The notes: generated by a model from the letters alone, not told the origin. A stretch of DNA of 64,000 nt from Ramazzottius varieornatus (GCA_001949185.1 BDGG01000016.1:124001-188000), one strand, 5' to 3'; positions 779 through 34,300 are shown, counted from the stretch's first letter. Numbers and translations: made by a program.

Positions 779-997
779 GAAGGCTCGGCGAACTAAAATA
801 AGCCGCTTTCGCCGTTCTTAGCCGTGGCTAAAAGTATTTTAGCCGCGGCTAAAGCAGCTANNNNNNNNNNNNNNNNNNNNNNNNNNNNNNNNNNNNNNNN
901 NNNNNNNNNNATTTTAGCTGCTTTAGCCGCGGCTAAAATATTTTCAGCCACGGCTAAGAACGGCTAAAACGGCTTATTTTAGCTTCGCCGAGCCTTC
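779..997. mobile_element. Foldback/MITE-like element with ~82-bp inverted arms spanning the assembly gap (N 861-910)
   Basis: 779-860 (gaaggctcggcgaactaaaataagccg...taaagcagcta) is the near reverse complement of ~911-997 (...tagctgcttta...cttcgccgagccttc). The arms contain internal tagccgcggcta palindromes. No clear TSD. Confidence 0.7.
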
Positions 998-6373: not shown

Positions 6374-7558
6374 TTACGAGACTTGCGATGGGTTGTCCCC
6401 TTTCGACTGAAAACGAAATGTAATCGTGGCTCCAGAACGAATGGGATTGGGTGTCTCAGTCGAAATCAAGCAGCCTTCAGGTGCTTTGACCTGCAATGAT
6501 GCGTGAACCGAATAAAATATCTGATCGAATACATTCAACTGAATAAAGCTATGAAAAATAGCAGGTAGGTACGCACTCTTCCAAGAGAGTCCTCCGAGGT
6601 ATACTCCCATACTCCATCAGCTTCTGATGCCCAAGGACCTATACTCTCGACTTTAAGGCACCCTCCCGGTGCGACAGTTGGCTGTACAACAAGACCAAAG
6701 GGGTTGACCGAGTCTTTGGGATGCGCTTCCCTGTATCGAGCCGCGGCTTGAGTCATGACATCGTACACCGTAGCTTGTGGCCGAAGAGGGAGAGTCGTGG
6801 CGTAGGCTTGACCATCCAGCCCGTGCACGACAACCGTCACCCGCGGCTGCAACGGCAAGAAACCAGGCGAAGTTAACCAGGAAAAATGTGAGCCAGGCAA
6901 ACCAAGTTGTTTATTCCAAGTGGCGCACGTTTTCATTGTTATCGGTGAGAATGGTGCGCCACTCAATATGTCAACCGTGTACAATTCGTTCGTCCAGGTT
7001 CGTACCCCGTTTGAATCTATTCGATGACTGTAGTATTTAACTTACCGGATGGTTGGCCATCCTAGTTCCTAGCATGCGCATCGGGTTGGCCTGCTTTTCG
7101 GAGCCTCGTCGGAAGGCAAACGCGGCTGCTGGTGAATATCCGTTAGCAATAGGAGACAGACGCACTGGAGGTTTATAGGCCAGCGGGGATTTCGCGGAAG
7201 AGTCAGTTAGCCACTTGGGCGGCCAGGTGTAGTTTGGGTCCACAACACGACCGAGGCGAGCTCGTGGAGAGCGACGACCACGAAACAGACGAAAAAGCGA
7301 AGAGCCGGAGTGCGTCGGCCATGTGCATTGTTGGCAACCAGTAGAAACACGCAGATGGCTCTGCCTTGTCCAGCCCTACAGCAGGAAAGGCAAATTTTAT
7401 TTTATGCTCTGACGGTACGTTTCAGATTCAGAGAATGTTTAATAGTACCACCTCACCGGAAATTCGTCATCGCGTCTGGAATGGAAGCGCCATCCGCTAC
7501 AAAGTCCGACGATACCGGGAAAAGCCAAGACGAGGAACACGAGCAGAAAGATCTGCAT
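6374..7558 (-). CDS. Secreted protein with C-terminal transcobalamin/intrinsic-factor beta-domain-like (DUF4430-like) fold; 4 exons
   Basis: Exons 7558-7457 (signal peptide MQIFLLVFLVLAFPGIVGLCSG), 7375-7046, 6846-6577 and ~6491-6374 join in phase 0. The C-terminus ATVYDVMTQAA...VESIGPW...WEYT...G...SGATITFRF matches the DUF4430 pattern by eye. Confidence 0.7.
6890..6975. repeat. Family A palindromic element (intronic)
   Basis: caagtggcgcac-N25-gtgcgccactca. Confidence 0.8.
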
Positions 7559-8212
7559 CCTCTGCAAAACCAACCATCAAAAAAAGTGAAGGAAATCAAG
7601 GAGATGTGACGAATTTGCAAAAGCCCCCACGTACCTTGCAGGGCTCTTCGATAAATGCGGTCTAATAGCGTTGCTCCGTATATGCTGGAACCCTTCACGA
7701 GGATGATAGTGTATCAGCAAGCTCATTGAAACACCTAGTGTAAACAGCCGTTTCCTGTTTTCATCGCCTTTAAGGGTCTTCACCGGATCGCCTTCCAGGT
7801 TTTCGGGAAATGAAAAAAGCGAAGACAAGTTGCTCCTGACGCATTCAACTGTCATGGTAGAAGCCACGACACAATAGGTAGCGCTCGTCACCACATTCCA
7901 AGTGCCACTCGGCAGATAATTTATTTCCTCTCAGCTTGGGTCTTCCCTTCACACCTTGATTACAAAACTAAACATCCGCCTTTTGTACGGGCGAAAATAA
8001 ACAGGGCGAATACGAGCCGGACCATGATTAGTTTTGCAGCAGGTGCACTGGCTTACAGCACGCGACCATCAATCAGTGCCACTCCCTTTCGAGTACGCAA
8101 TCCCACCTTCCGATTTAGCTGAGCAACGAAGCTACCTTATAAACGAAACTACCTGCAGTGCACTGAAGCCTGGTACATTCACACTTCCATCAAAACCAAG
8201 AAAAAAACGAGG

Positions 8213-8329
8213 GAGCTCGGCGGACAAGCTCGATAAGATTGTTTTTCCAGATGGCGCACATTTTCACTGTCACTGGGTGGAAACGTGCGCCACTTGGAAA
8301 GACGATCTTGCATGGTTGATTTTTTGCCG
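8213..8329. repeat. Family A palindromic element (intergenic)
   Basis: gagctcggc...agatggcgcac-N25-gtgcgccacttgg...tttgccg. Confidence 0.85.
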
Positions 8330-8600
8330 CCGTTTGTTTTAGAATTTTGTTTAATTGGTGTATAATATGACAAACCAGAACTTCTCGTGTGCTTCTGTAG
8401 GAACTTTCAACGGACAGAAGCAAAAAGCTTCTCTAAAAACATACAAAACGTATAAAAGTCCAGCAGAGGTGCCATCAGAACTCTTCTCGTAGGGTCTGAG
8501 ACACTCATACTGTACGACTCACAAAACCAATCAACGGAAAAGAAGAACCGTCGTGTTTGAAGACTTGATAAGAGAGGCGATTAAGTTGTTGAGCAAAGTA

Positions 8601-11600
8601 TTATGAGCGTTTGGCTCTCTTACTGGAGGAACCAGACGAGGGAGTCTTTTCGGCTGGCTCGCTGAACAGGTAATCCAGCAATCCCGGGCTCTTCCTAGTG
8701 CGTGGCGCCTCTGGGATCCCCGAGGGCCTGAAACAAAAACCAACAATGTTAATTCCATGTCCTTCTCTTCGTACTTCATTTTAAAAATGGATAAATTTAT
8801 TCCCGCATTGGTTTCTCACAGTAAAATTCTACAAAGTTCAGTTGGACTTGGACAAACAAAGTCAACGCTCATAATACCGGGGGTACAACTCGGTTTCGCA
8901 GCGCACGGTTACCTGACCGCAAATCACTTCCTGTGCAGCTTTGGCGGTTCAGTATTTGTTTGCCTGTAGTGGCAAGTTCTCTATGACATGTAGCTGGTGA
9001 TCGCTGGCTAAACACTACGTACCGAATTAGAAATATTTTAGTGGGTTCGAGGGCAAACTACTCCCAACACATGTTCCAGGTCCTTCTTCACGCGTTCAAC
9101 AGCTGGAAAAAAATTCAGAATAACTCACAATCACTTCTTTACAACATTATATCTCCAGCGTCCAACTAGCGGTTGTCCAGTGGTCAGACAAAAAATCGCA
9201 AGTTGCACGTTGTTTTTCGACATATGGCGCAGCTTATGACGTCACGAACGATACTACCACTGGTGGCGCCGCCAAGATGGCAAGAATTCAATTTTTCAGA
9301 TTTCTATTTTACGCATTGCCGTTTTACGCATTTCACGCATTGCCTTGTCCCAGAAACCCTGAGCGAAGAACGATGATTGTTTGTGGCTCATGTAAAGTTC
9401 ATGTTTGTGCAGCGCACAGATTAACGAAGCAGAGTGTTGTTTGTTTAGATTGCAGCAAGAAGAAATCGAAATAAGTGTAGCGAAAAATAAAATGAAATAC
9501 ATTGGCGTACCCCGGTCATGTGGCGGAACATTACGTTGGTTTTGCGCAGTAACATTCGCAATTTCATGGGGGAGCACCGTGATTGGTCTGTACACGCCTC
9601 TATCGTGCTTCCAGCCAGTAAAAAGGCTGCGAAACTCAGTTGTAGCCCCGGTATTCTGCCAGCATGAAATTGCCCGGTATTACCAGTGTTTACAAACTTA
9701 GTATGACCGTTGTCCAAGTGATGCACATTTCTAGTCAGTAAGATCGAAAACGTGCGCCACTTGAAATAACAATCTTGCCGACCTTCCCAGGTGGCACACT
9801 CTTCCAGCTAATAACAGGGAGAGCGTGCGCCACTGGAGAAAACGATGCTGCCGGGTTCGTTTGCCGAGGTGCAATGTATGTGAAAAATTTTCAGCCTACT
9901 TACTCTGGGGCGGGTGCTTGTTCTTCTGGACCATCCACTTCAAACGACACAATCTCGTTTTCCAAGTTGAAGGACACTCGCTTCTTGGTTTTCGGAGTCA
10001 ATTGACTGCTTTCGCTTGACGGCTGTGACGTACTGGCAGTCGGTGTCACACTGGGCCCTCGCAGCTTCCTGGTAGTCTGTCGCGTGCGTCCCAGTGGCAC
10101 ATCCGTGGGCGTCGCTGGAGAACTGGCAGGTGTAGGTGGTGGAGTAGCTGGTACTGCGGGCAGACCAAACAATTCATGGACTGCCGGCTGTACCTTTTGC
10201 GAGACCGGTGTGGAGTTCTTCTTGATTCGTTTGGGACTTGGGCTGTCTTCCGCGTCGCGTTTGGCCGGTGAGCGGGCACTAGAGCGCGCAGCTGGGTACA
10301 GGTTGTCCGTGTCTTCGCGGAGCTTGGCTCTGAGGTCTCCGGACAGTGACAAGTCAGCTGCAACAAACAAGAAAATTTTGACAACCGTTCCGAACAGACG
10401 AACTGACGCAGGACTCGACTCGTTAGAACCCCAACGGAAAAGAGGAGGTCGGCAAATAAAACGTCACGATTACTATGTTGAATGTCGCACGCTTCCTGTT
10501 AATAACAATGGAATCATGCGCCAAACAAAAAGCACAAAACTGTCAGCAACCACGACGACATGCGCCACTTGAGAAAACGACAGTTTTTACCTTCTGTCTG
10601 CCGACCTCAACGCACAACATGACAATAAATTTCGAAAAGAGTTGCTTCTCGGCGACAATCAAGTACCTGCGTGTTCTCTGGGTACGGCTTCCAGGTTGTT
10701 GAGTTCCTTGAGCATGGCGTTGGTGGTCCGGTCGATGGCTTGACGGACCCAGTCGACGTTGAGTGATGGTGACAAGCTACTGCCCATCAGTTCGCTCTTG
10801 CGACGTGGCGGAGGCCGAACAGCCTAAACGTGAAGCCAATATATTGTTACTGCACCCTTCCTCACAGTAAACTAGGTAAAGTAGGCAAAGTAAAATATAC
10901 AATACTACCTTCTGGGCTTCTCTCTTCTGTCGTTGCGCCATCTCGTAATAACGTTCCCGCTCAGCTCGCGCTTCCTCCATGTCCGCTCTGGCTTCTTCTG
11001 CTTTCCGCTTGGTTTCAGCTAGCTCTGCTTCAGCTTGTCGTTGGGCCAAGCTCTTCTGGTATTCGGCAAAGGCCAGCTTTGGGTCTTGCGCAGGTCTCGC
11101 CGGGGGATCTTGCGGCACTTTAAAGCTGGAAAGCGAAACATACAATATCTGATCAGTTCTTTTAGAAGACGTTTACAGCTTCTCTTACACTCCATCGGCT
11201 GTGGTCTTGCTTCCAGAATCCCCCCAGCCTCCACCAGAAGACCCTGCATCGCCCCACCCGCTTCCCCCATCACCAGCGATATCACCCCAGCCACTTCCGG
11301 CGTTGGTGGCTTCGTCAGCCTTGGTGGCAATGGTGGCATCTCCCCATCCATCGCCACTCGCTGTGGCACCAGAGTCTCCACCATTTCCCCAACTGTCACT
11401 TGTGGGAGGATTAGAGTTACGAGGACCGCCGCCACCGCTAGCATTTCGTGGCTGCGCCCATTCAATCCGCAGGAAACGACCATTTGGAAAAGGCTTGCTA
11501 CAGAAACAAGCAGGTCCCTTCCACACACTTCAACAAAGTGCTGCACTAAAACCGAATCTGTCAAAGTCATACTTACGTTCCGTTCAACATGGTACCATAC

Positions 11601-14600
11601 TTTTCGCCTTCTTCCATGCTATTGAAGGAAGCAAAGCCAAAGTGCTTTCCTTCCGGTACAAAGGCATTTGATACCGTGGCTCCTTTAGCTTCGAAAGCGG
11701 CTTTGAGATCATCAGATTTGACGGTTCCGTCGTCACCTAGGAAAAGCTGCACTAAACGAAGAGTTCTCAGACAAACTCGCACAGGAACTCGCATTACGAC
11801 GAAGTGAGCCACTGCGGTTAAAGTAAAATAACTTACCAAGCCCAGTGATTCTCAGCTTCCATTTGCCTCTATCTTCTACAGGCGTTCCTCCAGGCCTAAA
11901 AAGATAGAAACGGTGGATGAAGTCGCTCTCAATAAGATCACCGAACAAAAATGTAAGACAAAGGCATTCGATAACACTTACGGTTTTCCTCCCTGTCCAT
12001 CAAAGTTGTGCGATCTCCCACTGTTCGGAGGAGCCGACGGCGTACTACCCGTGTCACCCCAACCACTGCCGGAAGACGCCGCAGGGTCGTTGGCAGTAGA
12101 GGATCCATCTCCCCAGATGCCACCGGTGGAGCCAGCATCGCTACTTGTCGTCGTACTGTCACCCCAACCTCCACCAGAAGCAACTGTTGGTTCAGAGCTG
12201 GTAGCGCCGGCATCACCCCATCCACCACCAGCAGCACCATCTGTCGATCTGCAAGTACCGCCCCAACTATCCGTGGTACCTCCGGTGGATGTCGTGCTGG
12301 TGCTGACGCCGGGACAGTTGTTGGCCATGTGTCCGTGCTGCTGACACTTGAAGCAGTTGCGACCACCGCCACCAGCACCGCCTTTAGGCAGCGCCCATTC
12401 GACTTTCAGGAAGCGACCGTTCAGGAAGGGCTTGCTGTAAACATGGAGCTGTTAGACATCGTCTTTTGTCTCAGTTGGCAGAAAAAAAGTCGAACTCTGC
12501 TTACCTTCCGTTCATAATCGCCCCATACTTTTCGGCGTCTGCTTGCGTATTAAAGGAAATAAACCCAAAATGCTTTCCTTTGGCTACGAAGACGTCAGCC
12601 ACCGTAGCGCCCTTTGCCTCGAACGCAGCTTTCAGGTCTTCCGCCTTCACTGAACCCTCATCTCCTGCAAAATTATCATCCTCGGTCAGTCACGAAACTA
12701 ATGACGAACAGGAATCACGAGCATCATAATACGGGAAAATCTGCTCCTGTCATATCAGATGGTGTTCTTCACCACGACTTCAGGTCTGACAGGGATAACT
12801 TAGTCATCATGACAACTCCCCACTCTTTCTGACTCGTCAGAAGACTTACCGAAACCAACAACACGCAACTTCCACTTCCCACGGTCTTCCAGCGGAGTTC
12901 CGGTAATCCTTCAAGAAAAAACAACTGAACAGTATATCCAGACTGAAAGAAGACGAATCGAAGCAAAACACAGCCACAATCCTTACGGCTTCCCTCCTTG
13001 TCCATCTCGGTCACGGCCAGCGTTACTTGGAGCAGCCGTTGACGGAGCACTAGACACAGCACCCCAATCGCCTCCTCCCCCGCCGCCGGAAGTATCACCC
13101 CAACCACCGCCCCCATTGTCCCCTGCTTCTGTCGTGGTCGTTCCAGCATCGCCCCACCCGCCACCGGTGGCAACTGCTGGCTCAGTGGTAGCGGCACTGG
13201 CATCCCCCCATCCACCACCAGTACTCTCTGACGTAGTGCTCGGCTCACTTACAGCAGCTCCCCAACTGTCCGTGCTACTGTCGTTCGATGCCGTGTTGGT
13301 GTGGACGCCTGGACAGCTGTTGGCCATGTGACCAGACTGATGACACTTGAAGCAGTTGCGACCACTTCCGCCGCCGCCACCACCACCACCGGCGGCAGTT
13401 CGGGGCTGCGCCCACTCGATCCGCAGGAAACGACCTTTCGGGAAAGGCTTGCTGAAAATACAAGGAACAATCAATAAAAAACCAGCTGAAATACGAACTT
13501 CATCGAAACTGAATCCAACAAGTCACACTTACGTTCCGTTCACCATGGTACCATACTTTTCGCCTTCTTCCTGGCTATTGAAGGAAACAAAGCCAAAGTG
13601 CTTTCCTACCGGAACAAAGGCGTCCGGTACTGTGGCTCCTTTGGCTTCAAAAGCGGCCTTCAGATCGTCTGATGTTACGGCTCCGTCATCTCCTGTCAGA
13701 CAACCACATTAAACTCAGAGTTCACGGACGAGCTCGCGCAGTGAGTTCGCGTTGGATACAATAAGATGCGCCTGCCTAACTACAGCGAAGAAACTTACCC
13801 AAGCCAGTAACTTTCAGCTTCCATTTGCCTCTGTCTTCCGTCGGTGTTCCTCCAGGTCTAAAAACAAGGTAACAAATAAACTCATGCTGAGTATCTTCCT
13901 CCTACAAAATCTACCACAGAAGCACCCAAAAATACTTACGGTTTGCCTCCTTCTGCGCCGAAGTTCTTCGATCTCTCAGTGTTCGGAGGAACCGATGGTG
14001 AACTTCCCGAATCGCCCCAGCCACTGCCTGCAGACCCAGCAGCGTCGTTGTTGGTGGAGGATCCATCTCCCCAGATACCACTAGTAGCGCCAGCATCGCT
14101 GCCAACCCATCCACCGTCAGAAGCAGCCGCTGGTTCAGAACTAGCAGGAGCGCCATCACCCCATCCGCCACCAGCTGCGCCATCTGTTGAAGATGAAGCA
14201 GAAGTACCACCCCAAGTATCCGTGCTACCTCCGGTGCATGCAGCGCTGGTGCTGACGCCGGGGCAGTTGTTGGTCATGTGCCCCGGCTGCTGGCACTTGA
14301 AGCAGTTGCGACCACCGCCACTGCCACCCCCACAACCCCCTCCAGCCTTGGGAAGTGCCCATTGGATGTTCATGTAACGACCGTTCGGGAACGGTTTGCT
14401 GCAAAAAGTGTTACTCATCTCATTGAAGGCATAAAAATTTTCGGTTTGGTGAAGAAGAGAAAGGAGAAAGAAGCCGCCAAGGAAGCCGGGACAGAATTTG
14501 TGACGATGAAAGTAAAAAACACGATTGCTGCCGACCAGTGGCGGCCCCAACAAATTCAATTCGTTTTACCGGACGCAAAAAGCAGTCGAGTTTCAAATGT

Positions 14601-17600
14601 GCGGCCTCGGCTCGTGGAGCCGAACCGAACCGTTACGATATTTTCTGGTGCAACGTATCCCGACCTGACGACCCGGAACCGCCAGACGTTTGAGTTTCTG
14701 ACTACTAAGAATTAGAATTGTTTGGGCCACCACTGCTGCGGACCAACCTGCCATTCATCATGGTTCCATATTTCTCTGCATCTTCCTGGCTGCCGAAAGA
14801 GACGAAGCCAAAAGGCTTTCCTTGAGGAACATAGGCGTCCACCACTGTGGCTCCTTTCTCCTCAAAGACAGCTTTCAGACTGTCTGCGTTTACCGAGCCA
14901 TCGTCGCCTATAAAACGAACCGTCTCCACATCGTGCTCACCGACGCACAGGAGCCTTCACATATCAACGGACCAAAAGAAGCTTATACCGAATCCGACGA
15001 CGCGCAACTTCCACTTTCCCCGATCCTCATTTGGAGTTCCCGTCAACCTGCAAACATTTCATCTACTAAATTATTCTAGCACTACCAACAACCAGCGGAA
15101 ACACCCAAAATGTTTGGTCGCTCGACCACTTCACTAACGGTTTTCCGCCTTGTCCACCACGGTCACGGCCAGCACCACTGGAGGCCGGCGTGAAAGAAGC
15201 ATTCGATCCAGCGCCCCAGTCGCTACAACCCCCACCAGCAGCGTCGCCCCAACCACTTCCTCCGCTCGAGCCTTCGTCAGTCTTGGTAGTAGTCTCCCCA
15301 TCCGCCATTACCGCTGCGTCTCCCCATCCGCCATTACCGCTCGTTGGGGCACCAGAATCACCGCCCCCTCCCCAACTGTCACTTGTGGGAGCCGAGACCT
15401 GAATACTGGGAGGGGGATACGAGTTGGAGTTACGAGGACCGCCACCAGCGGCATTTCGTGGCTGCGCCCATTCGATCCGCAGGAAACGACCATTTGGAAA
15501 AGGCTTACTGAAAAAAAAACCCGTTACTTCGATACAGGGAAAATACTCCGCAGGACACTGAAATAATCAACTATTTCAGACCGAAGCAGTTAAGCGGCAC
15601 CTACGTTCCATTCATCATGGTGCCGAACTTCTCACCCTCTTCCTGGCTACTGAATGAAACAAAGCCAAAGTGCCTTCCTTCCGGGACAAAGGCATCCGGT
15701 ACCGTGGCTCCTTTAGCTTCGAAAGCGGCTTTGAGATCATCAGATTTGACCGTTCCGTCGTCCCCTGCAATACATCACAGTCAAAGCCGGAGTTCTAGAC
15801 CAACTTGCGCAGCAACGCGGTGTTAAATACGAGGAAATGCGGGAGCCTCACCGCAAAGCGACATACCGAGACCTGTTACTTTCAGTTTCCATTTGCCCCG
15901 GTCTTCCACCGGTGTTCCTCCAAGCCTGAAATGCCACACAGTATACGAATCTCCCTCCACAACTACATCAAATTCCATCTGTCCTAAAGGAATCCACAAA
16001 CACTTACGGCTTCCCTCCCTGCCCACCAAAGTTGTTCGATCTCCCAGCGTCGGCAGGAGCAGACGGCGTACTTCCCGCGTCGCCCCAACCACCGCCCGAA
16101 GTACCAGCAGCGTCGTTGTTGGTAGAGAATCCATCTCCCCAGAGGCCAGCAGTTGAGCCAGCATCGCTACTTGTTGTTGCACTGTCACCCCATCCACCGT
16201 CAAAAGCAGCTGCTGGTTCAGAACTGGCAGTTGCGCCATCACCCCATCCACCACCAGAAGATGAAGCAGAAACACCACCCCAACTGTCCGTAACGTTTTC
16301 GGTGGATGTCGTGCTGGTACTGACGCCGGGACAGTTGTTGGCCATGTGTCCGTGCTGCTGACACTTGAAGCAGTTGCGACCACCGCCACCAGCACCGCCT
16401 TTAGGCAGCGCCCATTCGACTTTCAGGAAGCGACCGTTCAGGAAGGGCTTGCTGTAAACATGGAGCTGTTAGACATCGTCTTTTGTCTCAGTTGGCAGAA
16501 AAAAAGTCGAACTCTGCTTACCTTCCGTTCATAATCGCCCCATACTTTTCGGCGTCTGCTTGCGTATTAAAGGAAATAAACCCAAAATGCTTTCCTTTGG
16601 CTACGAAGACGTCAGCCACCGTAGCGCCCTTTGCCTCGAACGCAGCTTTCAGGTCTTCCGCCTTCACTGAACCCTCATCTCCTGCAAAATTATCATCCTC
16701 GGTCAGTCACGAAACTAATGACGAACAGGAATCACGAGCATCATAATACGGGAAAATCTGCTCCTGTCATATCAGATGGTGTTCTTCACCACGACTTCAG
16801 GTCTGACAGGGATAACTTAGTCATCATGACAACTCCCCACTCTTTCTGACTCGTCAGAAGACTTACCGAAACCAACAACACGCAACTTCCACTTCCCACG
16901 GTCTTCCAGCGGAGTTCCGGTAATCCTTCAAGAAAAAACAACTGAACAGTATATCCAGACTGAAAGAAGACGAATCGAAGCAAAACACAGCCACAATCCT
17001 TACGGCTTCCCTCCTTGTCCATCTCGGTCACGGCCAGCGTTACTTGGAGCAGCCGTTGACGGAGCACTAGACACAGCACCCCAATCGCCTCCTCCCCCGC
17101 CGCCGGAAGTATCACCCCAACCACCGCCCCCATTGTCCCCTGCTTCTGTCGTGGTCGTTCCAGCATCGCCCCACCCGCCACCGGTGGCAACTGCTGGCTC
17201 AGTGGTAGCGGCACTGGCATCCCCCCATCCACCACCAGTACTCTCTGACGTAGTGCTCGGCTCACTTACAGCAGCTCCCCAACTGTCCGTGCTACTGTCG
17301 TTCGATGCCGTGTTGGTGTGGACGCCTGGACAGCTGTTGGCTATGTGACCAGGCTGCTGGCACTTGTAGCAGTTGCGACCACCGCCACCGCCGCCTCCAC
17401 CACCCCCTCCAGCCTTGGGAAGTGCCCATTGGATGTTCATGTAACGACCATTCGGGAAGGGTTTACTGCAAAAATTTCGTACAGGAACGACGGGGTATTA
17501 TGGGCCAGTAAAACCTACCGACCAGGCGGAAAAGACGGCAAATTTACAGTGGAAGTCAGAAACAGAAATCGGACAAATGACGTAACGTGGTAAAATTGTC

Positions 17601-20022
17601 ATGGACCGTGCCCATCAGCCGATCAGCTGTTTGACTTTTGCGTTTCGAGACTGCGGATTGTTCATTTACTTTCTTCCAGCGACGCTCCTCGAAAAGAAAA
17701 GAGATGTTCCTGCAAAACAGAGATCTATCTACTGTTATACACTGACATTTTCAGCTCCTTGGCTCAATATTCAGCACGTACGTACAGCAGTCCGGCCTTC
17801 GATGCTGTTTTTACTTGTAGCAAGAATCACCTGCCCGTGCCGCCGTAGCGGAAGGGCCTGGTCCGTAATTTTTACTGGCCAATTATATCCCGTCGTTCGT
17901 GTACATCTCGTTTTCTCAAAAATTTCATACAAAATTTTCGGTTTAGTGAAGAAGAGAAAGGAGATAAAACCCGGGTAGAATTGTAACGAACAGAGTTCGA
18001 AACACGACTGTTGCGGACCAACCTGCCATTCATCATGGTTCCATATTTCTCTGCGTCTTCTTGAGTAGTGAAAGAGATGAAGCCGAAAGGCTTTCCGTCC
18101 GGGACATAGGCGTCCACCACAGTGGCCCCTTTCTCCTCAAAGACGGCTTTCAGACTGTCTGCGTTTACCGAGCCATCGTCACCTGTGAGACCCAACCGTC
18201 TCCACAGCGTTATCTACTCGAAAATGCACAACTTTTCGAACTTGGAGCTTCTCTTACCAAAGCCGACGACGCGCAACTTCCACTTGCCACGATCTTCAGT
18301 TGGAGTTCCGGTCAGCCTGCAAACATTTGGGTCTCGAGACATTCTAAATTTTTTCCGAAAGCCACCGAGATCCAGATGTGATGTGCGATCGTTATACACC
18401 TACGCCTTTCCGCCCTGTCCACCTCGTTCACGACCGCTGTTCCCACTGGAGACGGGCGCCGCAGCAGCAGGTACAAAACCCCAATCGGTACCATTACTTG
18501 CAGCAGCTGCACTACCATCTATACCAGCTGCTCCTTCATTTCCCGCCGACTCCGCTATGGCACTTCCAGTCGCATTTGCCGAGGTACCTGGACAAGTGTT
18601 GGCCATGTGGCCAGACTGTTTGCATTTGTAACAGGTCCGTGAAGTACCACCACCATTCCTTGGCAGCGCCCAGTCGATCTTCAAGCACCGACCAGAAGGG
18701 GACGGCTTGCTGAAAACACACGCCCAGGTTACAAAGGCAAAGAGACTTTGGCTGATTTCTGATCAATCAACAAATTTCGCAAGTTGCTTCCGCAAATCTT
18801 ACCTTCCGTTCATTTCTGCGCCATACTTCTCTGCCTCTTCCTGACTGCTGAATGATACGAAGCCGAAATGCTTGCCTTCCGGGACGAAGCAGTCTATGAC
18901 AGTAGCTCCTTTGGCTACAAAGGCAGCTTTCAGGTCCTCCGTTTTCACTGCGCCATCGTTGCCTAAGAACAAACTAACAGTTAGGCCCGCCATAAAAATG
19001 TGCCGGAACCCACGCAGGCCGGACAGTTACTTAAACAAGAGACAGCTACGGCTCGCCTTCATTAACTCACAAACGTATGACTCGCCATAAAACCAAAACA
19101 CTCGGTCGAGGCCGGCGACACAAGCGAAACCAGTACAGTCCTACCTGTGAGATTGTCACAATTGCTTCTTCTGTAACCGAACAGCGTTTCTGCACGAGAC
19201 TGCTGGCCACGCACTGCGCAGCAGGATCAGCTGATCGATGTCCGGTTGTCTTTTGACTTGCTCAAGCAATCAAGCGACTTCCGATCAGCTGATCGGTCTC
19301 ATACGCACAGCATGGCGAGCAAATCCGTGCACACATGAACCGTCCGGAACTGATTTCGGGCGTTTGAACTGTCACATCTCACAGCTAGGACTGTAGTCAT
19401 AAGTAGCCTACCTAAACCGACAACTCGGAGCTTCCATTTGCCATTTTCCTCCATCGGAATGCCATCGATCCTACCAGATACATCGAAGGTAAAGTACGGA
19501 GTAGATACTCGAAGCATAAGGAAAGTCTTACGGTCTTCCAGACCCATAGTGTCGTCCACTGGAGGCTTCGCCATTCTCACCGACAGGTGTCGCGTTCAAT
19601 GGGCATTCTGTCGACAAGTGGCCTATTTTCTTACAGAGATGACACCCGGCTGCCTGTACAAGCCAAGGGAGAACTTATGAGTTATGTTGCGAACATTGGT
19701 CAGCTAAAAAAAACGACATACCAGCTGGTCTAATGCGATTGAGTAAGCTTGCAGCTGCAGCTGAAATTCGTCTGGAGCTTCGGAAACAAGGGAAGTTGAA
19801 GCAAACATGTCGTAATTTCCGAGAGAAGTTCGGTTCTTCTCTGGAGACTGTCGCTCGTGATTCTGCGAAGAGGAGACAGTAGTTTTCTCAGTTCAGATAC
19901 CGGTTCCTCACTCTGTCAAATTGTCAGCAATCAGGTGTTACCTCCGGAACAAAAAGGGGTTCTGTCTTGATCTCCTCATCGTCAGATACTTCTCCTTCTT
20001 CGTCCTCGCTAGGCCAACCCAT
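8601..20022 (-). CDS. ~2,100-aa multi-module RNA-binding protein: 8 RRM, 7 CCHC zinc knuckles, ~34 WG motifs, coiled coil and basic/Pro-rich tail (~31 exons)
   Basis: A 3-exon cassette is repeated 8 times: (A) GTPxEDRGKWKLRVxGLG, (B) DDGxVxxxDLKAAFExKGATVxDAFVPxGKHFGFVSFxSQEEGEKYGTMxNG (RNP1-like), (C) KPFPxGRFLRIEWAxP-(G)n-RNCFKCQQxGHMANxCP followed by a GGWGD-rich tract. Putative ATG at 20022 (MGWPSEDEEG). A GTAAGT donor after 9904 joins terminal exon 8727-8601 in frame. Confidence 0.85.
8866..9688 (+). mobile_element. Internally deleted piggyBac-like DNA transposon relic in the last intron of the RRM-WG gene
   Basis: 30-bp inverted repeats at 8873-8902 and 9626-9655 match at 27/30. Degenerate termini are cgctcataataccggg / cccggtattaccagtg, flanked by tcaa and ttta (each one mismatch from TTAA). 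A remnant ORF to 9474 encodes CPRNPERRTMIVCGSCKVHVCAAHRLTKQSVVCLDC, resembling the piggyBac C-terminal Cys-rich domain. Confidence 0.7.
9715..9869. repeat. Family A palindromic element, tandem dimer (intronic)
   Basis: Two N25-spaced units about 74 bp apart, ending tttgccgagg. Confidence 0.8.
10445..10608. repeat. Family A palindromic element, degenerate dimer (intronic)
   Basis: Termini gaggtcggca...tgccgacctc with two atgcgcca half-sites. Confidence 0.7.
12283..13324. repeat. Copy 1 of a ~1.04-kb near-identical internal duplication
   Basis: Matches 16300-17341 (offset 4017), introns included. The ORF track shows identical ORFs at 12466/16483, 12614/16631 and 12769/16786. Confidence 0.95.
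16300..17341. repeat. Copy 2 of the ~1.04-kb internal duplication
   Basis: Matches 12283-13324; one mismatch noticed near the left edge (12302/16319). Confidence 0.95.
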
Positions 20023-28389: not shown

Positions 28390-31300
28390 TCAGTGGCGAT
28401 GCATGAAGCAAGAGTTGTCTCCATCTTTTCCTCTAGCACCTTCGTGCCGCGCTCCTTCCATGAACTCTCCTCGTCCATACCGATGCTGAAGATGTGGCGG
28501 TAAAGAAGGCAGGGTCGTCTGGCTGGAGCTCTTTGAGAAGTAGACCGACGAAGACGAGTTTTGTCCCGGCACGTGGGAGTTAGTCACTGACGACCGCTCC
28601 GACGGCATGTGCGGAAAGTCGGCAATCTCGGCGTAGACTGCCGCCATTTGGCCGTAGTACTCGGGGTACCATAGCAAGTAGTCAAACTTCTCGCAGTGCG
28701 GCGGCGGCTGTATGCCGTCGTGAGGCAAACCTATTAGGATAAACCGGCTAAAAGACGGCCACACATTCCAACAAAGAGGAATAAAATACCTGCGCCAAGC
28801 CGCACTTTGGGCTGTGCTCGAACGCATCGACTATTACCACTGCTAGCCGAGGACGAGCTATGCGAGCACCGTTCTTGATCGCTAGGTCGCTTGTACTGTT
28901 CTTCGTCTCCACCCTCAATGTCGAACCGGTGGATGCTTTCGTGACTTCCGGGCGCGCTAGGTGGTAAAGGGACTTTCAGCGTGTAGTCACCCATCTCATC
29001 CACGTCGGGCAAACCTGAGTCTGGCATCACACTAGGAAAACTGCAAACCATCAGCCAGCAGTTAGTTTTCTTACTTTCAAACTCGACAGAAAGGGGGAAC
29101 TTACCCAGTGCCTCGTCGGCCCTTCTTGTAGGCGTTGGACGGACAGTAGCGTGCACCATACATTGTCCTAACTTCATCATCTTCGGCTGAGCCGCGTCCG
29201 CTAGACGAAGCGTCCGAACAGTGCATGAGGGTACCGTTGATGGGGTCGTGGTAGTGGTTGCCGCCATGAACCGAGTTGTCGATACCATGGAAGGCCGAGT
29301 ACTGCAGACCGTTGTCCGAGTGGACATATGCCTGTCGCCCGCGACACTTTCGTCGCTGCTTCCGTACGCAAAGCGCAGCGGTGAGAAGTAGCACCACAAC
29401 GAGGACCACGATACCCACGGCTACACCGATGATGACGTGACTTTGAGTTTGCGTAGATTGAGTGAGATCGTACTCGGGTTCGCCAAAGATCACAACCACT
29501 AACGTTGCGTCACTTTTTGAGCCTGGAAAAAGAAAAGAGAGGATTACAAGCCTAACCCAGCGTGAGACTAAGACGAAAAACCATAGTTTGATCACGCATT
29601 GTTACATGGGAGCTCGGTAAAGAAACTCGACCACATCGTTTTCCCAAGTGGCGCACGTCGGCACTAACGTAAGCTGGAAGCGTGCGCCACTTGGGAAGAC
29701 GAGCCAGAAGAATTTGTTTGCCGAGCTCCCACATGTGAAGTTCGTAACTTATGTGAAACCTAGTCGGGATAGATAATGCTTGTGTGTTTTGATACCTTCT
29801 CGTCCACTACTGGCAATGACTAGCGATGAAACTTCCGGCGTTATCACGTTGTTTTCCGTTGCCGTCGCATTATCCTGTTTCCCCGAGTCATTCTCTTTCT
29901 GGAAGTCCATCTTCATCGTAATCAGCCCTGTGGTATTGTTCAGGTACAGCATATCCGGTGCATTCTGGAACTTGTACACCACGGCTCCATCAGGCCCGGC
30001 ATCTTGGTCATGGGCCATCACTTGTCCCACTATTTCGTCTTTTTTGGCTTTGGGTGACACGTAAAACCTGTAGGCTTTCTGGGCGAAGACTGGCGGGTAC
30101 TCATCCTCACTTTCCACGTTGACCGTCACTTGCACATCGGCTCGGCGATCGCCACTGTCCCTCGCGGTGACCACGAAGTTGTAGGTGTGTTTCTGTTCGT
30201 AGTCGAAGGGAACTTTAGACAAGACTTTGCCGGAAGTGGGCTCAATTTCGAATGCACTTGAGCCTTCATCACCTAAAACAAAAATTCCCAGTAAAAACCA
30301 GCATAAAGAAGTAATGGAAAGTGACCAGCAGCCACTTTCGCAAACCTGCATACGGATAACCCACAGGGCCACGATGAGCAAGTGTATGTAGATGCATGAA
30401 ATAATCTTCATTCCACGCACTTGCATACAGGCACTCAGCGGATCATGGTAAGCTCGTGTATGCAGGCTCGTGAGGCCTTCAGACAGGAATCGGATACCTG
30501 CGATCGAGTACTGTAATTTCCCGTAGACGCCTTCATCCCTGTCGTAAGCCTGTGCAGTGAAGATTAGCGTTCCAGCTGGGGCATTCTCGATGACCCTCTC
30601 GTTGTACTTGCTGACCGAGTAGCTGGGTGCATGGTCATTAGCGTCAGTCACATAGATGGTGGCTTCGACCACCGAGCTCTGCTTTTCCATGCTCCCGCTA
30701 TCCGCAGCTTGGATCATCAGCTTGTACTCGGTCGTAGCTTCATAGTCCAGCTCACCCACCACTTCCACGATGCCCGTCACGCTGTTGATCTTGAACTTGC
30801 CGGCTTCGTTGCCGGTCAGGATGGAGTACGAGATGGTGCCGTTCTCGCCAGCATCGTAGTCTGTGGCTTTGACTTGGAGGACGGCCGTGTTCTTCGCCAC
30901 GGCTTCGTTGACGAATGTCTTGTATTCACTCTCGTTAAACTTGGGCGCCGAGTCGTTAACGTCGTCGATGTAGATGATCACTTCGGCCGTCGTGTTGCGA
31001 ACTGGTCTACCAAAGTCGGACGCGACGACCTGCATTTCATAAGAGGTTAACTTCTATTTCCATCGGTTCAAACAATCAGATTGAAAAGAAATGATCCTCA
31101 TTTATTTCACCTTCAAAGAGTACGTGGCAGTCCTTTCCCTGTCGACGTTTCTGACCAGCACAATGCCACCAGTTCGATCGTCGATCTGGAAGGCGTTCTC
31201 GACATCTCCAAGTAAAGTATATTTGACCGAGGGAGTACCGTTGGGTGCGTCGGGGTCCGCCGCAGAGACCTGCAGCACCTTGCGGCCAAGCGGGGCGTTT

Positions 31301-34300
31301 TCCGGTAGGTGGACAGAGTAAACCGTCCGTGTGAAGACGGGGGCGTTACGATTGAGGCTGGTGATGCGAATCATCACTTCGGCCAGGGAAGTCAGTTTGG
31401 GACTACCACTATCTTCTGCTTGGACACCTAACGCAGTGAGTGGCTGCGCGGGATCGTACATCAGCGTCTTTGTCGACGACAGCACACCTAAAAACGAAAA
31501 CAATCTTACTAAGCTGAATGCAATGCAATTCAAATGGCGCAATATCCAGTTGATGTATTCAGGTTTGTGATGCTTGCACGCAATAACCAGTCAAGACAAC
31601 ATCCACCTAAATACAAGCACACAAAATATTTCGTCGAGCAATGGAAAGCTTTACCCGTGGTTTCGTTGATGGTGAAGCCAGAAACAGATGGTAAAGGCAA
31701 TGTGTATTTCACTCTGCCATTGGATCCTTCATCCTTGTCGTAAGCGCGGACAGTCAGAAGCGGAGTACCCGCAGGTGTCAGTTCGGGTACCGTCACTTCG
31801 TACTTGGCTTGGGAGAACACCGGATGGTTGTCGTTGATATCGGCCACGTTGATGGTCAGCTTGGTGACAGCGGTGTGGACTTTATCGGAGGCTTGGATGG
31901 TCAAGATATCTTGTGCCTGTCGTTCGCGATCCAGTGGCGCGGCTACGGTAATGGCTCCCGTCCGTCGGTTGACGGCGAAGCGCTTGCTGTCGGAACCAAC
32001 GATCGAGTAGGTTAAGCCGTCAGAGTTGATATCGACGTCGTTGGCGGCGACAGTAAAGACTGTCGTCCCAATGGACGCACCTAAAAGACAACATCCTTTG
32101 CAATCGACGGTTCCAAATCAGACATCCGCCAGGGAGTGGCCGACTTATCAGCGCGAGCCATAGGGAGGTCCTGGATGCGTGACACGCCTTGATAAGTCGG
32201 TCATGGCTCGATTTGGAATTTCTTGAACATATTTTATCAACAGACTTTACAAAATCGAAACTATGTCTAGAAAGTAGACTTTGTGGTCGCACCTTCCGAG
32301 ACGGTGACTGGTCCGTACTGCGGAAACACCGGGTCGTTGTCGTTGATATCGACGATGCTAACTTTGAGGGTACACGTGCCGGTTCTTCGCGGTACTCCAG
32401 CGTCCTTCGCCACCACCGTCAGCTTGAAGGTATCTTGAATTTCGCGATCGATCTGTCGGTTGGTCTTGACGATGCCGCTGAAGGGTGGATCAATGACAAA
32501 GGCGCCATCGGTGTTACCGTCGACAATCTCGAAGGTCAGTTCGCCGTTCTTGCCCGAGTCGTCATCCGTAGCAAACAGCTGGAAGAGAGTATACGTCAGA
32601 TGTCTGGTTGGATTTGTGCTGTGGAGGGGTTTTTCTCACCTGTACGACAAAAGCCCCCTTGTTGTTTCCTTCAAGGACCGACGCGGTGTACCTGCTCTGG
32701 CCGAACTTGGGGGCGTTGTCGTTTTCATCGATAACATACACCAGGACGCTGGTGTGTTCTTGAAGTCGATCTGCGTCGACCGATTCAGCCAAGACGGTCA
32801 AGTTGAACCTGTGGTACTTCTCGTAGTCGAGAAGTTTCACAGATTCGGTGTTGTGACGAACAGACACCAATCCTGAAATCACAAGGAACCTTTTGAGTAA
32901 AAAATGTCTATGGTGGAAGAACGAAAGACATACCGGTATTCTTGTCGATCTGGAATATATCACCGACATTGCCATTGACAATCGAGTACGCTATCGCTGC
33001 TTTATTGCGGTCAGAGCGAGTTGCTTTGACGGTAGTGACTTTAGTACCACCTCGACTGTTCTCTGGCAGTGAAGCAGTGTACGAAGGTTGTTGAGAAAAC
33101 TGCAGGGTGGCCGAAGACATCGGTGCATCCCCCACCATGATATCCAATAATCCTGTGTACAAGAGCGAAATGTTGCTGAATGGGAAGAAATTCACTGATA
33201 CGAATGGGAGACACGTACCGGTCGAAGACTTCGGTGTGTTATCGCCTTGGTCCTTCGCCACGACCGTCATATGGAACAGCTGCCCGGGACCTTGTGGTAC
33301 GATATCGTCTTTGGCCGTTACCACGCCGGTGCTCGGGTGAATCTCAAACTTGTCCTGTGGTTTCTCGAAACTGAACAGGACGTTTGAGTTTTTGCCGGCG
33401 TCTTTGTCTTCAGCGATCACTTTCGTGATGGCTTGGCCGTTCCTGATGGCATCTTTCGCTTGCACGTGATACCTTCAATGGTGGAAAAATTCATTCGTCA
33501 GTGCTTCGTCGCTGTTTAGATTGGAACAAAAGTTACATACTTGTACTGGCTGAATTCCGGCGCACTGTCATTGACATCATCCACCATGATGTCCAGCATG
33601 ACTTTGGTGCTTTGCGACTTCTGGATACCGTTATCGGTAGCCAGGACCTCCACCCGGTATTCGCGGAGGACTTCGTGGTCGAAGATCCCTGCAGTGGTGA
33701 CCAGACCGGACGCTTCGTTGATTTGCAGCAGCCCTCGGGAATCGTTACCGATGGAGTAGCTTACTCGACCGTTCTCCCCCACATCTTTATCCACAGCTTG
33801 AACCTGACACCAGAAAAATTAAAATTATTCTCTGATAGTATTATGGGAGGTCAGTCGGAACGTATAAGACCGTTATCTCAAGTGGCGCACTTTCCCATGC
33901 CTATTGGCTGAGAACGTGCGCCGGTTAAGACAGAGATCTTGCACGTTCCGTTTCCCGGCATGTCTTGGGATAATTTGCCGGTGTTTTAGATACGTACCTG
34001 TTCGACAAAAGTTCCAACTGGTGACTCTTCACTCAAATGGACTTTGTACCAATCTTTCACGAAGACGGGGAAGTTGTCGTTCTGGTCCATGACTGCAATT
34101 TCCATTCGGCAGCTGCTGGACTTGCTAGGCTTCCCGCGGTCTTCGGCCACGACAGTCAGGACATACTTGTCTTGTTCTTCCCGGTCGAGAGGCTTACTGG
34201 ACAACTCACCGTTCTCGCCATTGATGCTAAACTTCAAGGCTTCGTTTCCGCTTTCGATGCGGAGGGAAACCCGAGCGTTCTCGCCTTCGTCGCGATCAAC

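What the first reader, a model, noticed from the sequence alone, without database searches (positions are those of the whole stretch)
8601..20022. Giant multivalent RRM / zinc-knuckle / WG-repeat protein: candidate Argonaute-hook scaffold
Seen: one reading frame splices through 8 tandem modules, each an RRM followed by a low-complexity G/S/T/D/A tract with 1-5 (G/S/D)WG motifs, about 34 WG in total by hand count. Six modules also carry a CX2CX4HX4C knuckle, and a seventh knuckle lies N-terminal (CHLCKKIGHLSTEC). Known: WG/GW repeats in disordered regions are the Argonaute-binding 'hook' of GW182/TNRC6, S. pombe Tas3, plant NRPE1/SPT5L and Tetrahymena Wag1/CnjB (CnjB also has knuckles). GW182 has only one RRM. 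Inference: alternating RNA-binding and hook segments suggest a lineage-specific scaffold that couples RNA to many AGO/PIWI molecules or nucleates a germ/stress granule. I do not recognise this architecture from any characterised animal protein.
Basis: partly seen in the sequence, partly recalled or inferred. Interest (0 to 1): 0.88.

Follow-up and report, generated by a model that had tools for sequence, protein, structure and literature searches.

The report
Tardigrade eight-module RRM/knuckle/WG-repeat protein
A real, expressed tardigrade gene encodes a 2105-residue protein of eight repeated RNA-binding units, each followed by a floppy tract with regularly spaced tryptophan-glycine motifs like those that dock Argonaute proteins; that binding is untested and the gene is so far only a database "hypothetical protein".

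Summary
The window is from the tardigrade Ramazzottius varieornatus. On the minus strand, 20022..8601, lies a 31-exon gene with only GT-AG introns. Its product is identical to GenBank RvY_17612-1 ("hypothetical protein", 2105 aa). Intron-less contigs from four studies confirm 15 of the predicted splice junctions.

Each module is three exons (59 + 160 + 306-465 nt) and keeps the frame. The linker tracts are modelled as disordered. They are G/S/A/T/D-rich, and Trp is almost their only aromatic residue: 35 W, 34 of them followed by G, spaced 10-25 residues apart.

The only proteins found with the same architecture are two models from the tardigrade Paramacrobiotus metropolitanus. Their tracts also carry 5 W at nearly the same spacing, while the residues in between have diverged. 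Paired WGD motifs occur in no other gene of this genome.

The protein is not a GW182 orthologue; a separate GW182-like locus exists. The genome also has about 11 Argonaute/PIWI loci. The tracts meet all sequence-level criteria of WG/GW Argonaute platforms, but binding was not testable here. CCR4-NOT recruitment or plain condensate "stickers" remain live rivals. Verdict: an uncharacterised, lineage-specific new variant of GW-repeat proteins.

The parts
8601..20022 (-). Whole CDS of RvY_17612-1: 31 coding exons, 2105 codons plus stop
   Evidence: P0117 maps exactly, all introns GT-AG; protein found
19532..20022 (-). Exons 1-3: acidic N-terminus (starts MGWPSEDEE) and the N-terminal CCHC knuckle (aa 78-91, window 19603-19644). 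Exon 3 ends like a degenerate module exon C.
   Evidence: (zf-CCHC 21.5 bits)
18404..19470 (-). Module 1 (exons 4-6): RRM, knuckle, tract with 1 WG
17004..18316 (-). Module 2 (exons 7-9): RRM, knuckle, 5 WG
16008..16925 (-). Module 3 (exons 10-12): RRM, knuckle, 5 WG
   Evidence: joint 15924>16007 in RNA contigs
15139..15925 (-). Module 4 (exons 13-15): RRM, no knuckle, 4 WG
13940..15047 (-). Module 5 (exons 16-18): RRM, knuckle, 4 WG plus one WV
12987..13857 (-). Module 6 (exons 19-21): RRM, knuckle, 5 WG
11982..12908 (-). Module 7 (exons 22-24): RRM, knuckle, 5 WG
11189..11895 (-). Module 8 (exons 25-27): RRM, no knuckle, 5 WG
10909..11125 (-). Exon 28: E/K/R/A-rich stretch read as a coiled coil (about aa 1805-1860)
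   Evidence: read by eye from the sequence; no Pfam family
8601..10823 (-). Exons 29-31: S/P/T-rich basic tail with NLS-like clusters (SPKRIKK, SKRAKRS) and KKRVSF-8 residues-F (window about 9942-9986)
12303..13324 (.). 1022-bp stretch, introns included, identical to 16320-17341. It sits inside a ~1.9-kb duplication that is ~89% identical overall, with 100-bp windows outside the stretch mostly 56-82%. Gene-conversion tract or assembly effect.
16320..17341 (.). Second copy of the identical 1022-bp stretch

Best explanation
RvY_17612 is a tardigrade-specific, expressed gene for a multivalent RNA-binding scaffold. Shown: there are eight in-frame modules. Each has an RRM with an intact RNP1 (K-H-F-G-F-V-S-F), usually a CCHC knuckle, and a ~90-140-residue acidic tract rich in G/S/A/T that is modelled as disordered. 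All but the first tract hold 4-5 (G/S)WG(D) motifs 10-25 residues apart. The modules are followed by a coiled-coil-like segment and a basic tail. Inferred: the RRMs and knuckles hold single-stranded RNA. The Trp motifs are short linear docking sites that insert into Trp-binding pockets of partner proteins. The most likely partners are the PIWI domains of one or more of the ~11 Argonaute/PIWI proteins of this genome. One molecule could then gather many small-RNA effector complexes on bound RNA and, through its valency, drive RNP condensation. It would act alongside the canonical GW182-like gene, not in place of it.
For: The gene and its splicing are real. RRM_1 and zf-CCHC score above Pfam cut-offs. 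The tract model has mean pLDDT 48.7 and only one 4-residue helix, in the knuckle. Trp is almost the only aromatic residue of the tracts: 35 W, 11 F and 3 Y, with the F largely in the knuckles and the tract ends. 34 of 35 W are followed by G, and the spacing is 10-25 residues. The Paramacrobiotus homologues also keep 5 W per tract, at spacings 15/19/17/12, although their G content is halved and the rest has diverged. A divergent set of contigs (X11) carries only in-frame indels (+9, +3, +15, -3 nt) and loses no W among 28 substitutions. The composition matches the published WG/GW platform bias (PMC2910046). The spacing meets the rule of two W at least 10 residues apart for the three PIWI pockets (PMC9262622). 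About 11 PIWI-domain loci lie in the genome. Paired WGD motifs are unique to this gene.
Against: No interaction was tested. No Argonaute sequence was available in an allowed form for complex prediction. Pfam Ago_hook does not match, though that model covers only the TNRC6 hook. W motifs flanked by G/S/T also bind CNOT9/CNOT1, and aromatic residues in G/S-rich tracts can act as generic condensate stickers. The compositional screen cited also flags many glycine-rich proteins that have not been validated as Argonaute binders. The RNP2 aromatic position is Arg (L-R-V-V-G-F), so RNA binding may be atypical. A candidate canonical GW182 exists elsewhere in the genome, so no gap needs filling.
Confidence: 0.4

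Rival explanations
1. Condensate scaffold without a specific Trp receptor. The WG motifs act as aromatic stickers in G/S spacers, as Tyr does in FUS-like low-complexity domains. Together with eight RRMs they build RNA granules or chaperone RNA, possibly linked to the tardigrade's stress biology.
For: The protein alternates folded RNA-binding domains with disordered tracts. Valency is high. The nearest solved RRMs are TIA-1/TIAR RRM2 and nucleolin RRM4, from granule and nucleolar proteins. The RNA contigs in the 2016 study have fairly high word depth, about 100, though depth cannot rank genes.
Against: Stickers are usually Tyr or Phe and more closely spaced. Here Trp is used almost exclusively, nearly always as small-W-G, and both the number and the spacing of W are conserved across superfamilies. 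That looks like a docking motif. The gene is not in the supplementary files held for the dehydration-condensing-protein (DRYP) paper.
Confidence: 0.27
2. Direct RNA-tethered recruiter of the CCR4-NOT deadenylase. The W motifs insert into CNOT9/CNOT1 pockets, as those of the GW182 silencing domain do, so RNAs bound by the RRMs are repressed without Argonaute.
For: The same motif grammar applies: W flanked by G/S/T/D in disorder. RRMs and knuckles give intrinsic RNA targeting, which makes a small-RNA guide unnecessary.
Against: Nothing here was tested. From my own knowledge, known CCR4-NOT recruiters need only a few W motifs, not 35.
Confidence: 0.13
3. Nucleolin-like nuclear or nucleolar factor. 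It would be a multi-RRM protein with G-rich tracts, an acidic N-terminus, NLS-like basic clusters and an RVxF-type PP1-docking motif, acting in rRNA or RNP biogenesis. The WG motifs would be a lineage quirk of the G-rich spacer.
For: The best PDB match is nucleolin RRM4, including the '...DWAKPKG.GG' end. The basic C-terminal clusters and KKRVSF / KSVSF are kept in both tardigrades.
Against: The match is weak (23 bits). Nucleolin's spacer is an RGG/GAR tract, while these tracts are acidic and lack Arg. The conserved W number and spacing argue against a quirk.
Confidence: 0.1
4. The eight-module form is partly an assembly or annotation effect, and the true product has six modules, as in public isoforms -2 and -3.
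For: A 1022-bp stretch is identical between modules 6/7 and 2/3. Two of the three GenBank isoforms skip exons 21-26. One low-depth RNA contig joins modules out of order, and short-read contigs break at the borders of the identical stretch.
Against: The flanks of the identical stretch differ, so modules 6 and 7 are distinct copies. A 1652-nt RNA contig runs from module 7 exon C (starting inside the identical stretch) through module 6 into module 5, crossing unique sequence. Joints for every intron of modules 4-8 are seen in two to four studies.
Confidence: 0.1

Closest known systems
GW182 / TNRC6 / Gawky (animal miRISC scaffold)
   Same: Disordered G/S-rich region with many W motifs at least 10 residues apart; contains an RRM; multivalent.
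   Different: GW182 has one C-terminal RRM, UBA, Q-rich and PAM2 regions and no knuckles. None of these match here. A separate locus on contig C1 carries the TNRC6-PABC_bdg match (31.9 bits) with UBA-like, Q-rich and GW exons. So this is not an orthologue.
Tetrahymena CnjB and Wag1 (GW-repeat partners of Twi1p)
   Same: GW repeats bind an Argonaute-family protein (PMC2910046).
   Different: Ciliate proteins with no RRM array and no regular module structure. No sequence relationship was detected in the 1.84-billion-protein search.
Arabidopsis SPT5L/KTF1 and NRPE1 WG/GW platforms
   Same: Tens of WG/GW motifs in a tract where only the WG pairs and the composition are conserved between species; each binds several AGO4 molecules (PMC2910046).
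   Different: There the platform is a single C-terminal extension of a transcription protein. Here it is cut into eight tracts that alternate with RNA-binding domains.
Single-module RRM + CCHC proteins (SRSF7/9G8, ZCRB1, plant RZ-1)
   Same: An RRM directly followed by a G-rich linker and one CCHC knuckle. This rests on my own knowledge of these families and was not tested here.
   Different: They have one module, RS or other tails, and no WG tracts. None appeared among the 113 profile hits as a close relative.
Nucleolin RRM4 and TIA-1/TIAR RRM2
   Same: Nearest solved RRM sequences (E 8e-5 to 5e-4).
   Different: Only generic RRM similarity (about 21-23 bits); the spacer chemistry differs.

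Membership tests
RRM (Pfam PF00076) | Profile score above the curated cut-off | tested here: met
   Single exons score 19-30 bits against a cut-off of 20.7. The whole protein scores 118 bits. The eight exon-B copies share 24 invariant columns.
RRM (Pfam PF00076) | RNP1 and RNP2 aromatic residues for RNA stacking | tested here: inconclusive
   RNP1 (K-H-F-G-F-V-S-F) keeps both aromatics. RNP2 (L-R-V-V-G-F) has Arg at the usual aromatic position. Read; no binding assay.
zf-CCHC zinc knuckle (PF00098) | CX2CX4HX4C with a profile score above cut-off | tested here: met
   Seven copies. Scores are 21.5-28.1 bits per exon and 96.6 bits for the protein. Modules 4 and 8 have the knuckle deleted.
WG/GW Argonaute-binding platform | Repeated WG/GW motifs in an intrinsically disordered region | tested here: met
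   35 linker W, 34 of them WG. The AF2 model of exon C has mean pLDDT 48.7 and only one 4-residue helix, in the knuckle.
WG/GW Argonaute-binding platform | Composition bias: W, G, then N, S, A, D favoured; L, I, M, Y, C avoided (PMC2910046) | tested here: met
   G 26.7, S 13.7, A 12.6, T 9.7, D 6.6, N 5.1, W 3.6 %; L 0.4, I 1.0, M 0.6, Y 0.3 %; the Cys comes only from the knuckles. The authors' scoring tool itself was not run.
WG/GW Argonaute-binding platform | Little conservation between species apart from the W(G) positions | tested here: met
   R. varieornatus and P. metropolitanus tracts both have 5 W, at spacings of about 12-21, while G drops from 27% to about 14% and the remaining sequence differs.
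WG/GW Argonaute-binding platform | At least two W separated by 10 or more residues, to fill two PIWI pockets (PMC9262622) | tested here: met
   Spacings are 10-25 in all seven multi-W tracts.
WG/GW Argonaute-binding platform | Trp-dependent physical binding to an Argonaute/PIWI protein | not testable with these tools
   The tardigrade AGO genes are multi-exonic, so no unspliced reference or database id was available for complex prediction.
GW182/TNRC6 | Ago_hook (PF10427), UBA, Q-rich and PAM2/TNRC6-PABC_bdg (PF16608) regions | tested here: not met
   No such Pfam hit on P0117. PF10427 has no match in the genome, but nothing rang in the tool's control genomes either, so that search says nothing on absence. 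PF16608 matches a different locus, C1:8956785-8956898.

The most novel reading that the evidence does not exclude
Tardigrades evolved their own RNA-tethered poly-Argonaute scaffold. Each of the eight modules would bind RNA directly through its RRM and knuckle, and dock one or two AGO/PIWI complexes through its five spaced WG motifs. A single molecule would then concentrate up to a dozen or more small-RNA effectors on a transcript and nucleate a silencing condensate, independently of GW182. This would be a new class of animal GW protein.
Probability: 0.3. Interest if true: 0.8.

Novelty: new variant of a known kind. Interest (0 to 1): 0.6.

Why it matters
As far as I know (background knowledge, not checked here), GW182 is the main well-studied GW-repeat Argonaute partner in animals. 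A protein that interleaves eight RNA-binding units with eight Trp-motif tracts would be a different design: RNA binding and effector docking in the same repeat. Tardigrades have expanded Dicer genes (PMC12505628) and about 11 AGO/PIWI loci, so a lineage-specific scaffold would fit a remodelled RNAi system. The conserved number and spacing of Trp across two tardigrade superfamilies gives a clean, testable prediction (W>A). Germline knock-out and knock-in by DIPA-CRISPR now exists for this species (PMC11175437, listed). If the tracts bind nothing specific, the protein is still an unusual natural sticker-and-spacer RNA scaffold.

Tried and rejected
1. The search for homologous proteins with the Paramacrobiotus protein, with a two-module region of P0001 and with exon C returned only the species' own proteins, one fungal RRM protein and one mite fragment. 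Low-complexity words filled the candidate list in the first two searches, and the length window excludes shorter or longer kin. These blanks say little about range.
2. The protein-atlas search on module 2 gave only generic RRM clusters at 0.76-0.78, below the useful level.
3. Pfam Ago_hook has no match on the protein or in the genome. Nothing rang in that tool's control genomes either, so this is uninformative beyond 'not a TNRC6 hook'.
4. Complex prediction was not run. The likeliest partner, an Argonaute PIWI domain, is split over several exons at every locus examined, and no Argonaute protein id was returned by any search.
The source organisms of the unnamed Logan, ENA and JGI homologues could therefore not be traced.
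6. Literature: no paper holds RvY_17612, tardigrade + GW182 or a relevant tardigrade RRM/knuckle protein. The gene is absent from the supplements held for the DRYP paper.
7. Tandem Repeats Finder found no short-period DNA repeat behind the ~18-residue W spacing. The periodicity is at the protein level, not a recent microsatellite.
8. Joined-exon step: all searches with window sequence were made exon by exon by reference, and whole-protein searches used the database proteins P0117, P0001 and P0022 by id. In scripts I concatenated exons only to check that they equal P0117 and to map coordinates.


Full report
WHAT IS THERE

The window is contig C16:124001-188000 of a 55.8-Mb genome. It is the tardigrade Ramazzottius varieornatus. 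The protein encoded at the finding is identical to GenBank entries of that species.

Six-frame reading of the minus strand between 20.0 and 11.2 kb shows eight repeats of three conserved open segments:
- Exon A reads ..GTPxEDRGKWKLRVVGFG.
- Exon B reads GDDGSV..DLKAAFEAKGATV.DAFVP.GKHFGFVSF..EEAEKYG..MNG.
- Exon C reads SKPFPNGRFL.IEWA.P., then a G run, then usually RNCFKCQQ.GHMAN.CPG, then a long G/S/T/A/D tract with (G/S)WG(D) motifs that ends ..GGQGGKP.

Every boundary has a canonical acceptor and donor with matching phases. Exon A is 59 nt, exon B is 160 nt, and exon C is 306-465 nt and always a multiple of three. Each module is therefore frame-neutral.

Pfam run on single exons by reference finds RRM_1 on exon B and zf-CCHC on exon C and on the N-terminal exon. 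The eight exon-B copies share 24 invariant positions out of 53.

IDENTITY WITH A PUBLIC MODEL

A profile of the eight exon-B pieces was scored against 1.84 billion representative proteins. The top hit was P0001 at 632 bits. This is GAV07821.1, "hypothetical protein RvY_17612-3", 1653 aa. A sister isoform -2 has 1654 aa. A later search returned isoform -1, P0117, 2105 aa.

P0117 maps letter for letter onto 31 exons from the ATG at 20022 to the stop at 8603-8601. All introns are GT-AG.

On P0117 I count 8 RRMs, 7 CX2CX4HX4C knuckles (aa 78, 214, 395, 617, 1039, 1266, 1488), 53 Trp and 34 WG. Isoforms -2 and -3 differ by an in-frame skip of exons 21-26, from module 6 exon B to module 8 exon C (452 aa).

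EXPRESSION AND SPLICING

Twenty public runs hold about half of the sampled words of window 11150-17100. That is about the exon share of this stretch by my rough estimate. Contigs of four runs from four studies were laid on the stretch. They show 15 joints whose skipped parts end CT..AC, which is GT..AG on the gene strand. They coincide with the boundaries of exons 12-27.

These contigs are therefore RNA-derived, although the run records do not say so.

One 1652-nt contig (X1, record 2) runs from inside module 7 exon C through module 6 into module 5. It supports serial inclusion of the modules that isoforms -2 and -3 skip.

Caveats:
- These are short-read contigs. They break at the borders of a repeated stretch.
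- One low-depth contig (X9, record 16) joins modules out of order.
- Eight further joints were not displayed.
The full eight-module mRNA still needs long reads.

Run X11 is 95-99% alike, so it may be another strain; chimeric assembly between the similar modules cannot be excluded. It differs by in-frame indels only (+9, +3, +15, -3 nt). Among 28 substitutions it loses no Trp, and it even turns the single WV into WG.

ARRAY HISTORY

Self-comparison shows a ~1.9-kb duplication at a ~4.02-kb offset (11571-13458 against 15599-17473, 88.7% overall). Modules 2, 3 and 4 therefore correspond to modules 6, 7 and 8.

Inside it, 1022 bp are identical, introns included (12303-13324 = 16320-17341). In 100-bp windows outside that stretch, identity is mostly 56-82%. 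I read this as a gene-conversion tract, or less likely an assembly effect.

The exon-B profile finds only these eight copies in the whole genome, so there is no paralogue.

THE TRACTS

The eight linkers total 967 residues. Their composition is G 26.7, S 13.7, A 12.6, T 9.7, D 6.6, N 5.1, P 5.1 and W 3.6 %. L, I, M and Y are each at 1% or less. In seven of the eight tracts D+E clearly outnumbers K+R, by 10-13 against 3-5; in the first tract they are about equal, 5 against 6.

Of 35 linker Trp, 34 are followed by Gly (P = 8e-19 given the G content, although the modules are copies). In 28 cases the preceding residue is G, S or T, and four more have D. In 23 cases Asp follows at +2. Spacing between successive Trp is 10-25 residues, most often 18.

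An AlphaFold2 model of exon C, built with the eight paralogues as its alignment, has mean pLDDT 48.7. Its only secondary structure is one 4-residue helix in the knuckle. This is consistent with disorder.

A DNA pattern for two WGD motifs 27-57 nt apart hits the genome 15 times. Fourteen hits are in this gene, and the reversed control gives none.

RELATIVES

Among the 113 profile hits, only two other proteins combine RRM, knuckle and W tracts. They are XP_055333546.1 and XP_055333306.1 of Paramacrobiotus metropolitanus. They are auto-named "pneumococcal serine-rich repeat protein-like" and "mucin-19-like".

Their modules have the same order, and the second one has a comparable tail: a coiled-coil-like segment, basic clusters and KSVSF. 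Each of their tracts again has five Trp, at spacings of about 15/19/17/12. Glycine is only about 14% and the intervening sequence is not alignable with R. varieornatus.

Conservation of the number and spacing of one rare residue in otherwise drifting disorder is the signature of short linear docking motifs.

Short unnamed ORF fragments from ENA and JGI assemblies look like exon B of further tardigrade-like genomes.

Hypsibius was not seen. Given 50% clustering and the length windows of the tools, that is not evidence of absence.

WHAT IT IS NOT

It is not a GW182 orthologue:
- P0117 has no Ago_hook, UBA or PAM2 match.
- The TNRC6-PABC_bdg family matches a different locus (C1:8956785-8956898, 31.9 bits). 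That locus has UBA-like, Q-rich and W-containing exons beside it.

The nearest solved RRMs are nucleolin RRM4 and TIA-1/TIAR RRM2, at only about 21-23 bits.

HOW IT MOST LIKELY WORKS

Shown: a repeated array of RNA-binding folds alternates with disordered acidic tracts that carry conserved, regularly spaced Trp motifs.

Inferred: the RRMs and knuckles bind single-stranded RNA. RNP1 is intact and RNP2 has Arg at the aromatic position. The Trp motifs dock into Trp pockets of partner proteins.

The tracts satisfy all published sequence-level criteria of WG/GW Argonaute platforms:
- the composition bias, and conservation of the WG pairs only (PMC2910046);
- at least two Trp 10 or more residues apart, for the three pockets on the PIWI domain (PMC9262622).

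The genome offers about 11 PIWI-domain loci. One of them is a miRNA-class AGO with the conserved C-terminus.

I therefore rank the Argonaute-hook scaffold first, at about 0.4. The rivals are a receptor-less sticker-and-spacer condensate scaffold (about 0.27), a CCR4-NOT recruiter through the same W grammar (about 0.13) and a nucleolin-like nuclear factor (about 0.1). These four readings of the function are alternatives to one another. Separately, there is about a 0.1 chance that the module number is inflated; that question concerns the gene model, not the mechanism, so it is not part of the same sum.

The near-exclusive use of Trp and its invariant small flanks favour a pocket-docking reading (Argonaute or CCR4-NOT) over generic stickers. 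Nothing here discriminates Argonaute from CCR4-NOT.

NOVELTY

The gene model is already public but unnamed and unstudied. No paper in the library mentions it. The architecture is a tandem array of [RRM - CCHC - WG tract] units. It was found in no characterised protein, and only in tardigrades in the searches that could see it. I class it as a new variant of a known kind (GW-repeat platform proteins), with function unproven.

LIMITS

The following were not possible or were blank, and none of them counts against the finding:
- No interaction prediction was possible, because no Argonaute sequence was available in an allowed form.
- The protein-atlas search and two of the three homology searches were uninformative because of low complexity or length windows.

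Window sequence was searched exon by exon by reference. Exons were concatenated only inside scripts, to verify identity with P0117 and to map coordinates.

Noticed in passing
window 9942-9986 (-), aa 2037-2051 of P0117: KKRVSF followed eight residues later by F. This is an RVxF-type motif as used for PP1 docking; the spacing recalls the Ki-67/RepoMan motif, from memory. P. metropolitanus has KSVSF at the matching place in its tail.
   Followed up: partly
window 12303-13324 and 16320-17341: A 1022-bp stretch, introns included, is perfectly identical between the two places, within a ~1.9-kb duplication of ~89% overall identity at a ~4.02-kb offset. Gene conversion between modules, or an assembly effect.
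   Followed up: yes
G000:C1:8956785-8956898 and L011 about 7200-9750 (-): Candidate canonical GW182/TNRC6 gene of the tardigrade: a TNRC6-PABC_bdg match of 31.9 bits, with UBA-like, Q-rich and W-containing exons next to it.
   Followed up: partly
G000:C16:52846-53950 (+), about 70 kb from the window start: One of about 11 PIWI-domain loci of the genome lies on the same contig, not far from this gene. The others are on C1, C3, C4 (two), C5 (two), C12 (two), C14 and the far end of C16.
   Followed up: no
P0017 and P0022 (Paramacrobiotus metropolitanus): The two homologues both report a longest contig of 1,762,499 bases, so they are probably on the same contig. One ends abruptly inside a module and the other starts inside a WG tract. 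They may be halves of one gene of about 8 modules, and their automatic names (serine-rich repeat protein, mucin-19-like) are misleading.
   Followed up: no
P0002-P0009, P0019, P0023 (Logan transcript assemblies, source unknown): Proteins with 2-7 RRMs of a similar short-loop type (..TDVYIP.GK.FGFVRF..) separated by G-rich linkers, several of them rich in W (for example runs of GWG). They have no knuckles. This could be a parallel RRM/W-linker design in another, probably protist, lineage.
   Followed up: partly
P0119 (Medioppia subpectinata, oribatid mite, partial 265 aa): An RRM, then three (D/G)WG motifs in a G run, then RGG, then three CCHC knuckles of the CFNCGEEGHMSRECP type, which from memory recalls the Vasa N-terminus. 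Only the knuckle aligns with the tardigrade protein.
   Followed up: partly
window 11981-12126 with 15136-15762 (run X9, record 16): A low-depth RNA contig joins the end of module 7 exon C to module 4 exons B and C through an exon A. That order does not exist in the genome. It is probably a short-read assembly chimera between similar modules.
   Followed up: no
window 28734-38398 (-): Large multi-exon FAT-like cadherin gene (Cadherin and Cadherin_FAT4_N domains). It has no evident link to the finding.
   Followed up: partly
window 861-910: A run of 50 N (assembly gap), far from the gene.
   Followed up: no
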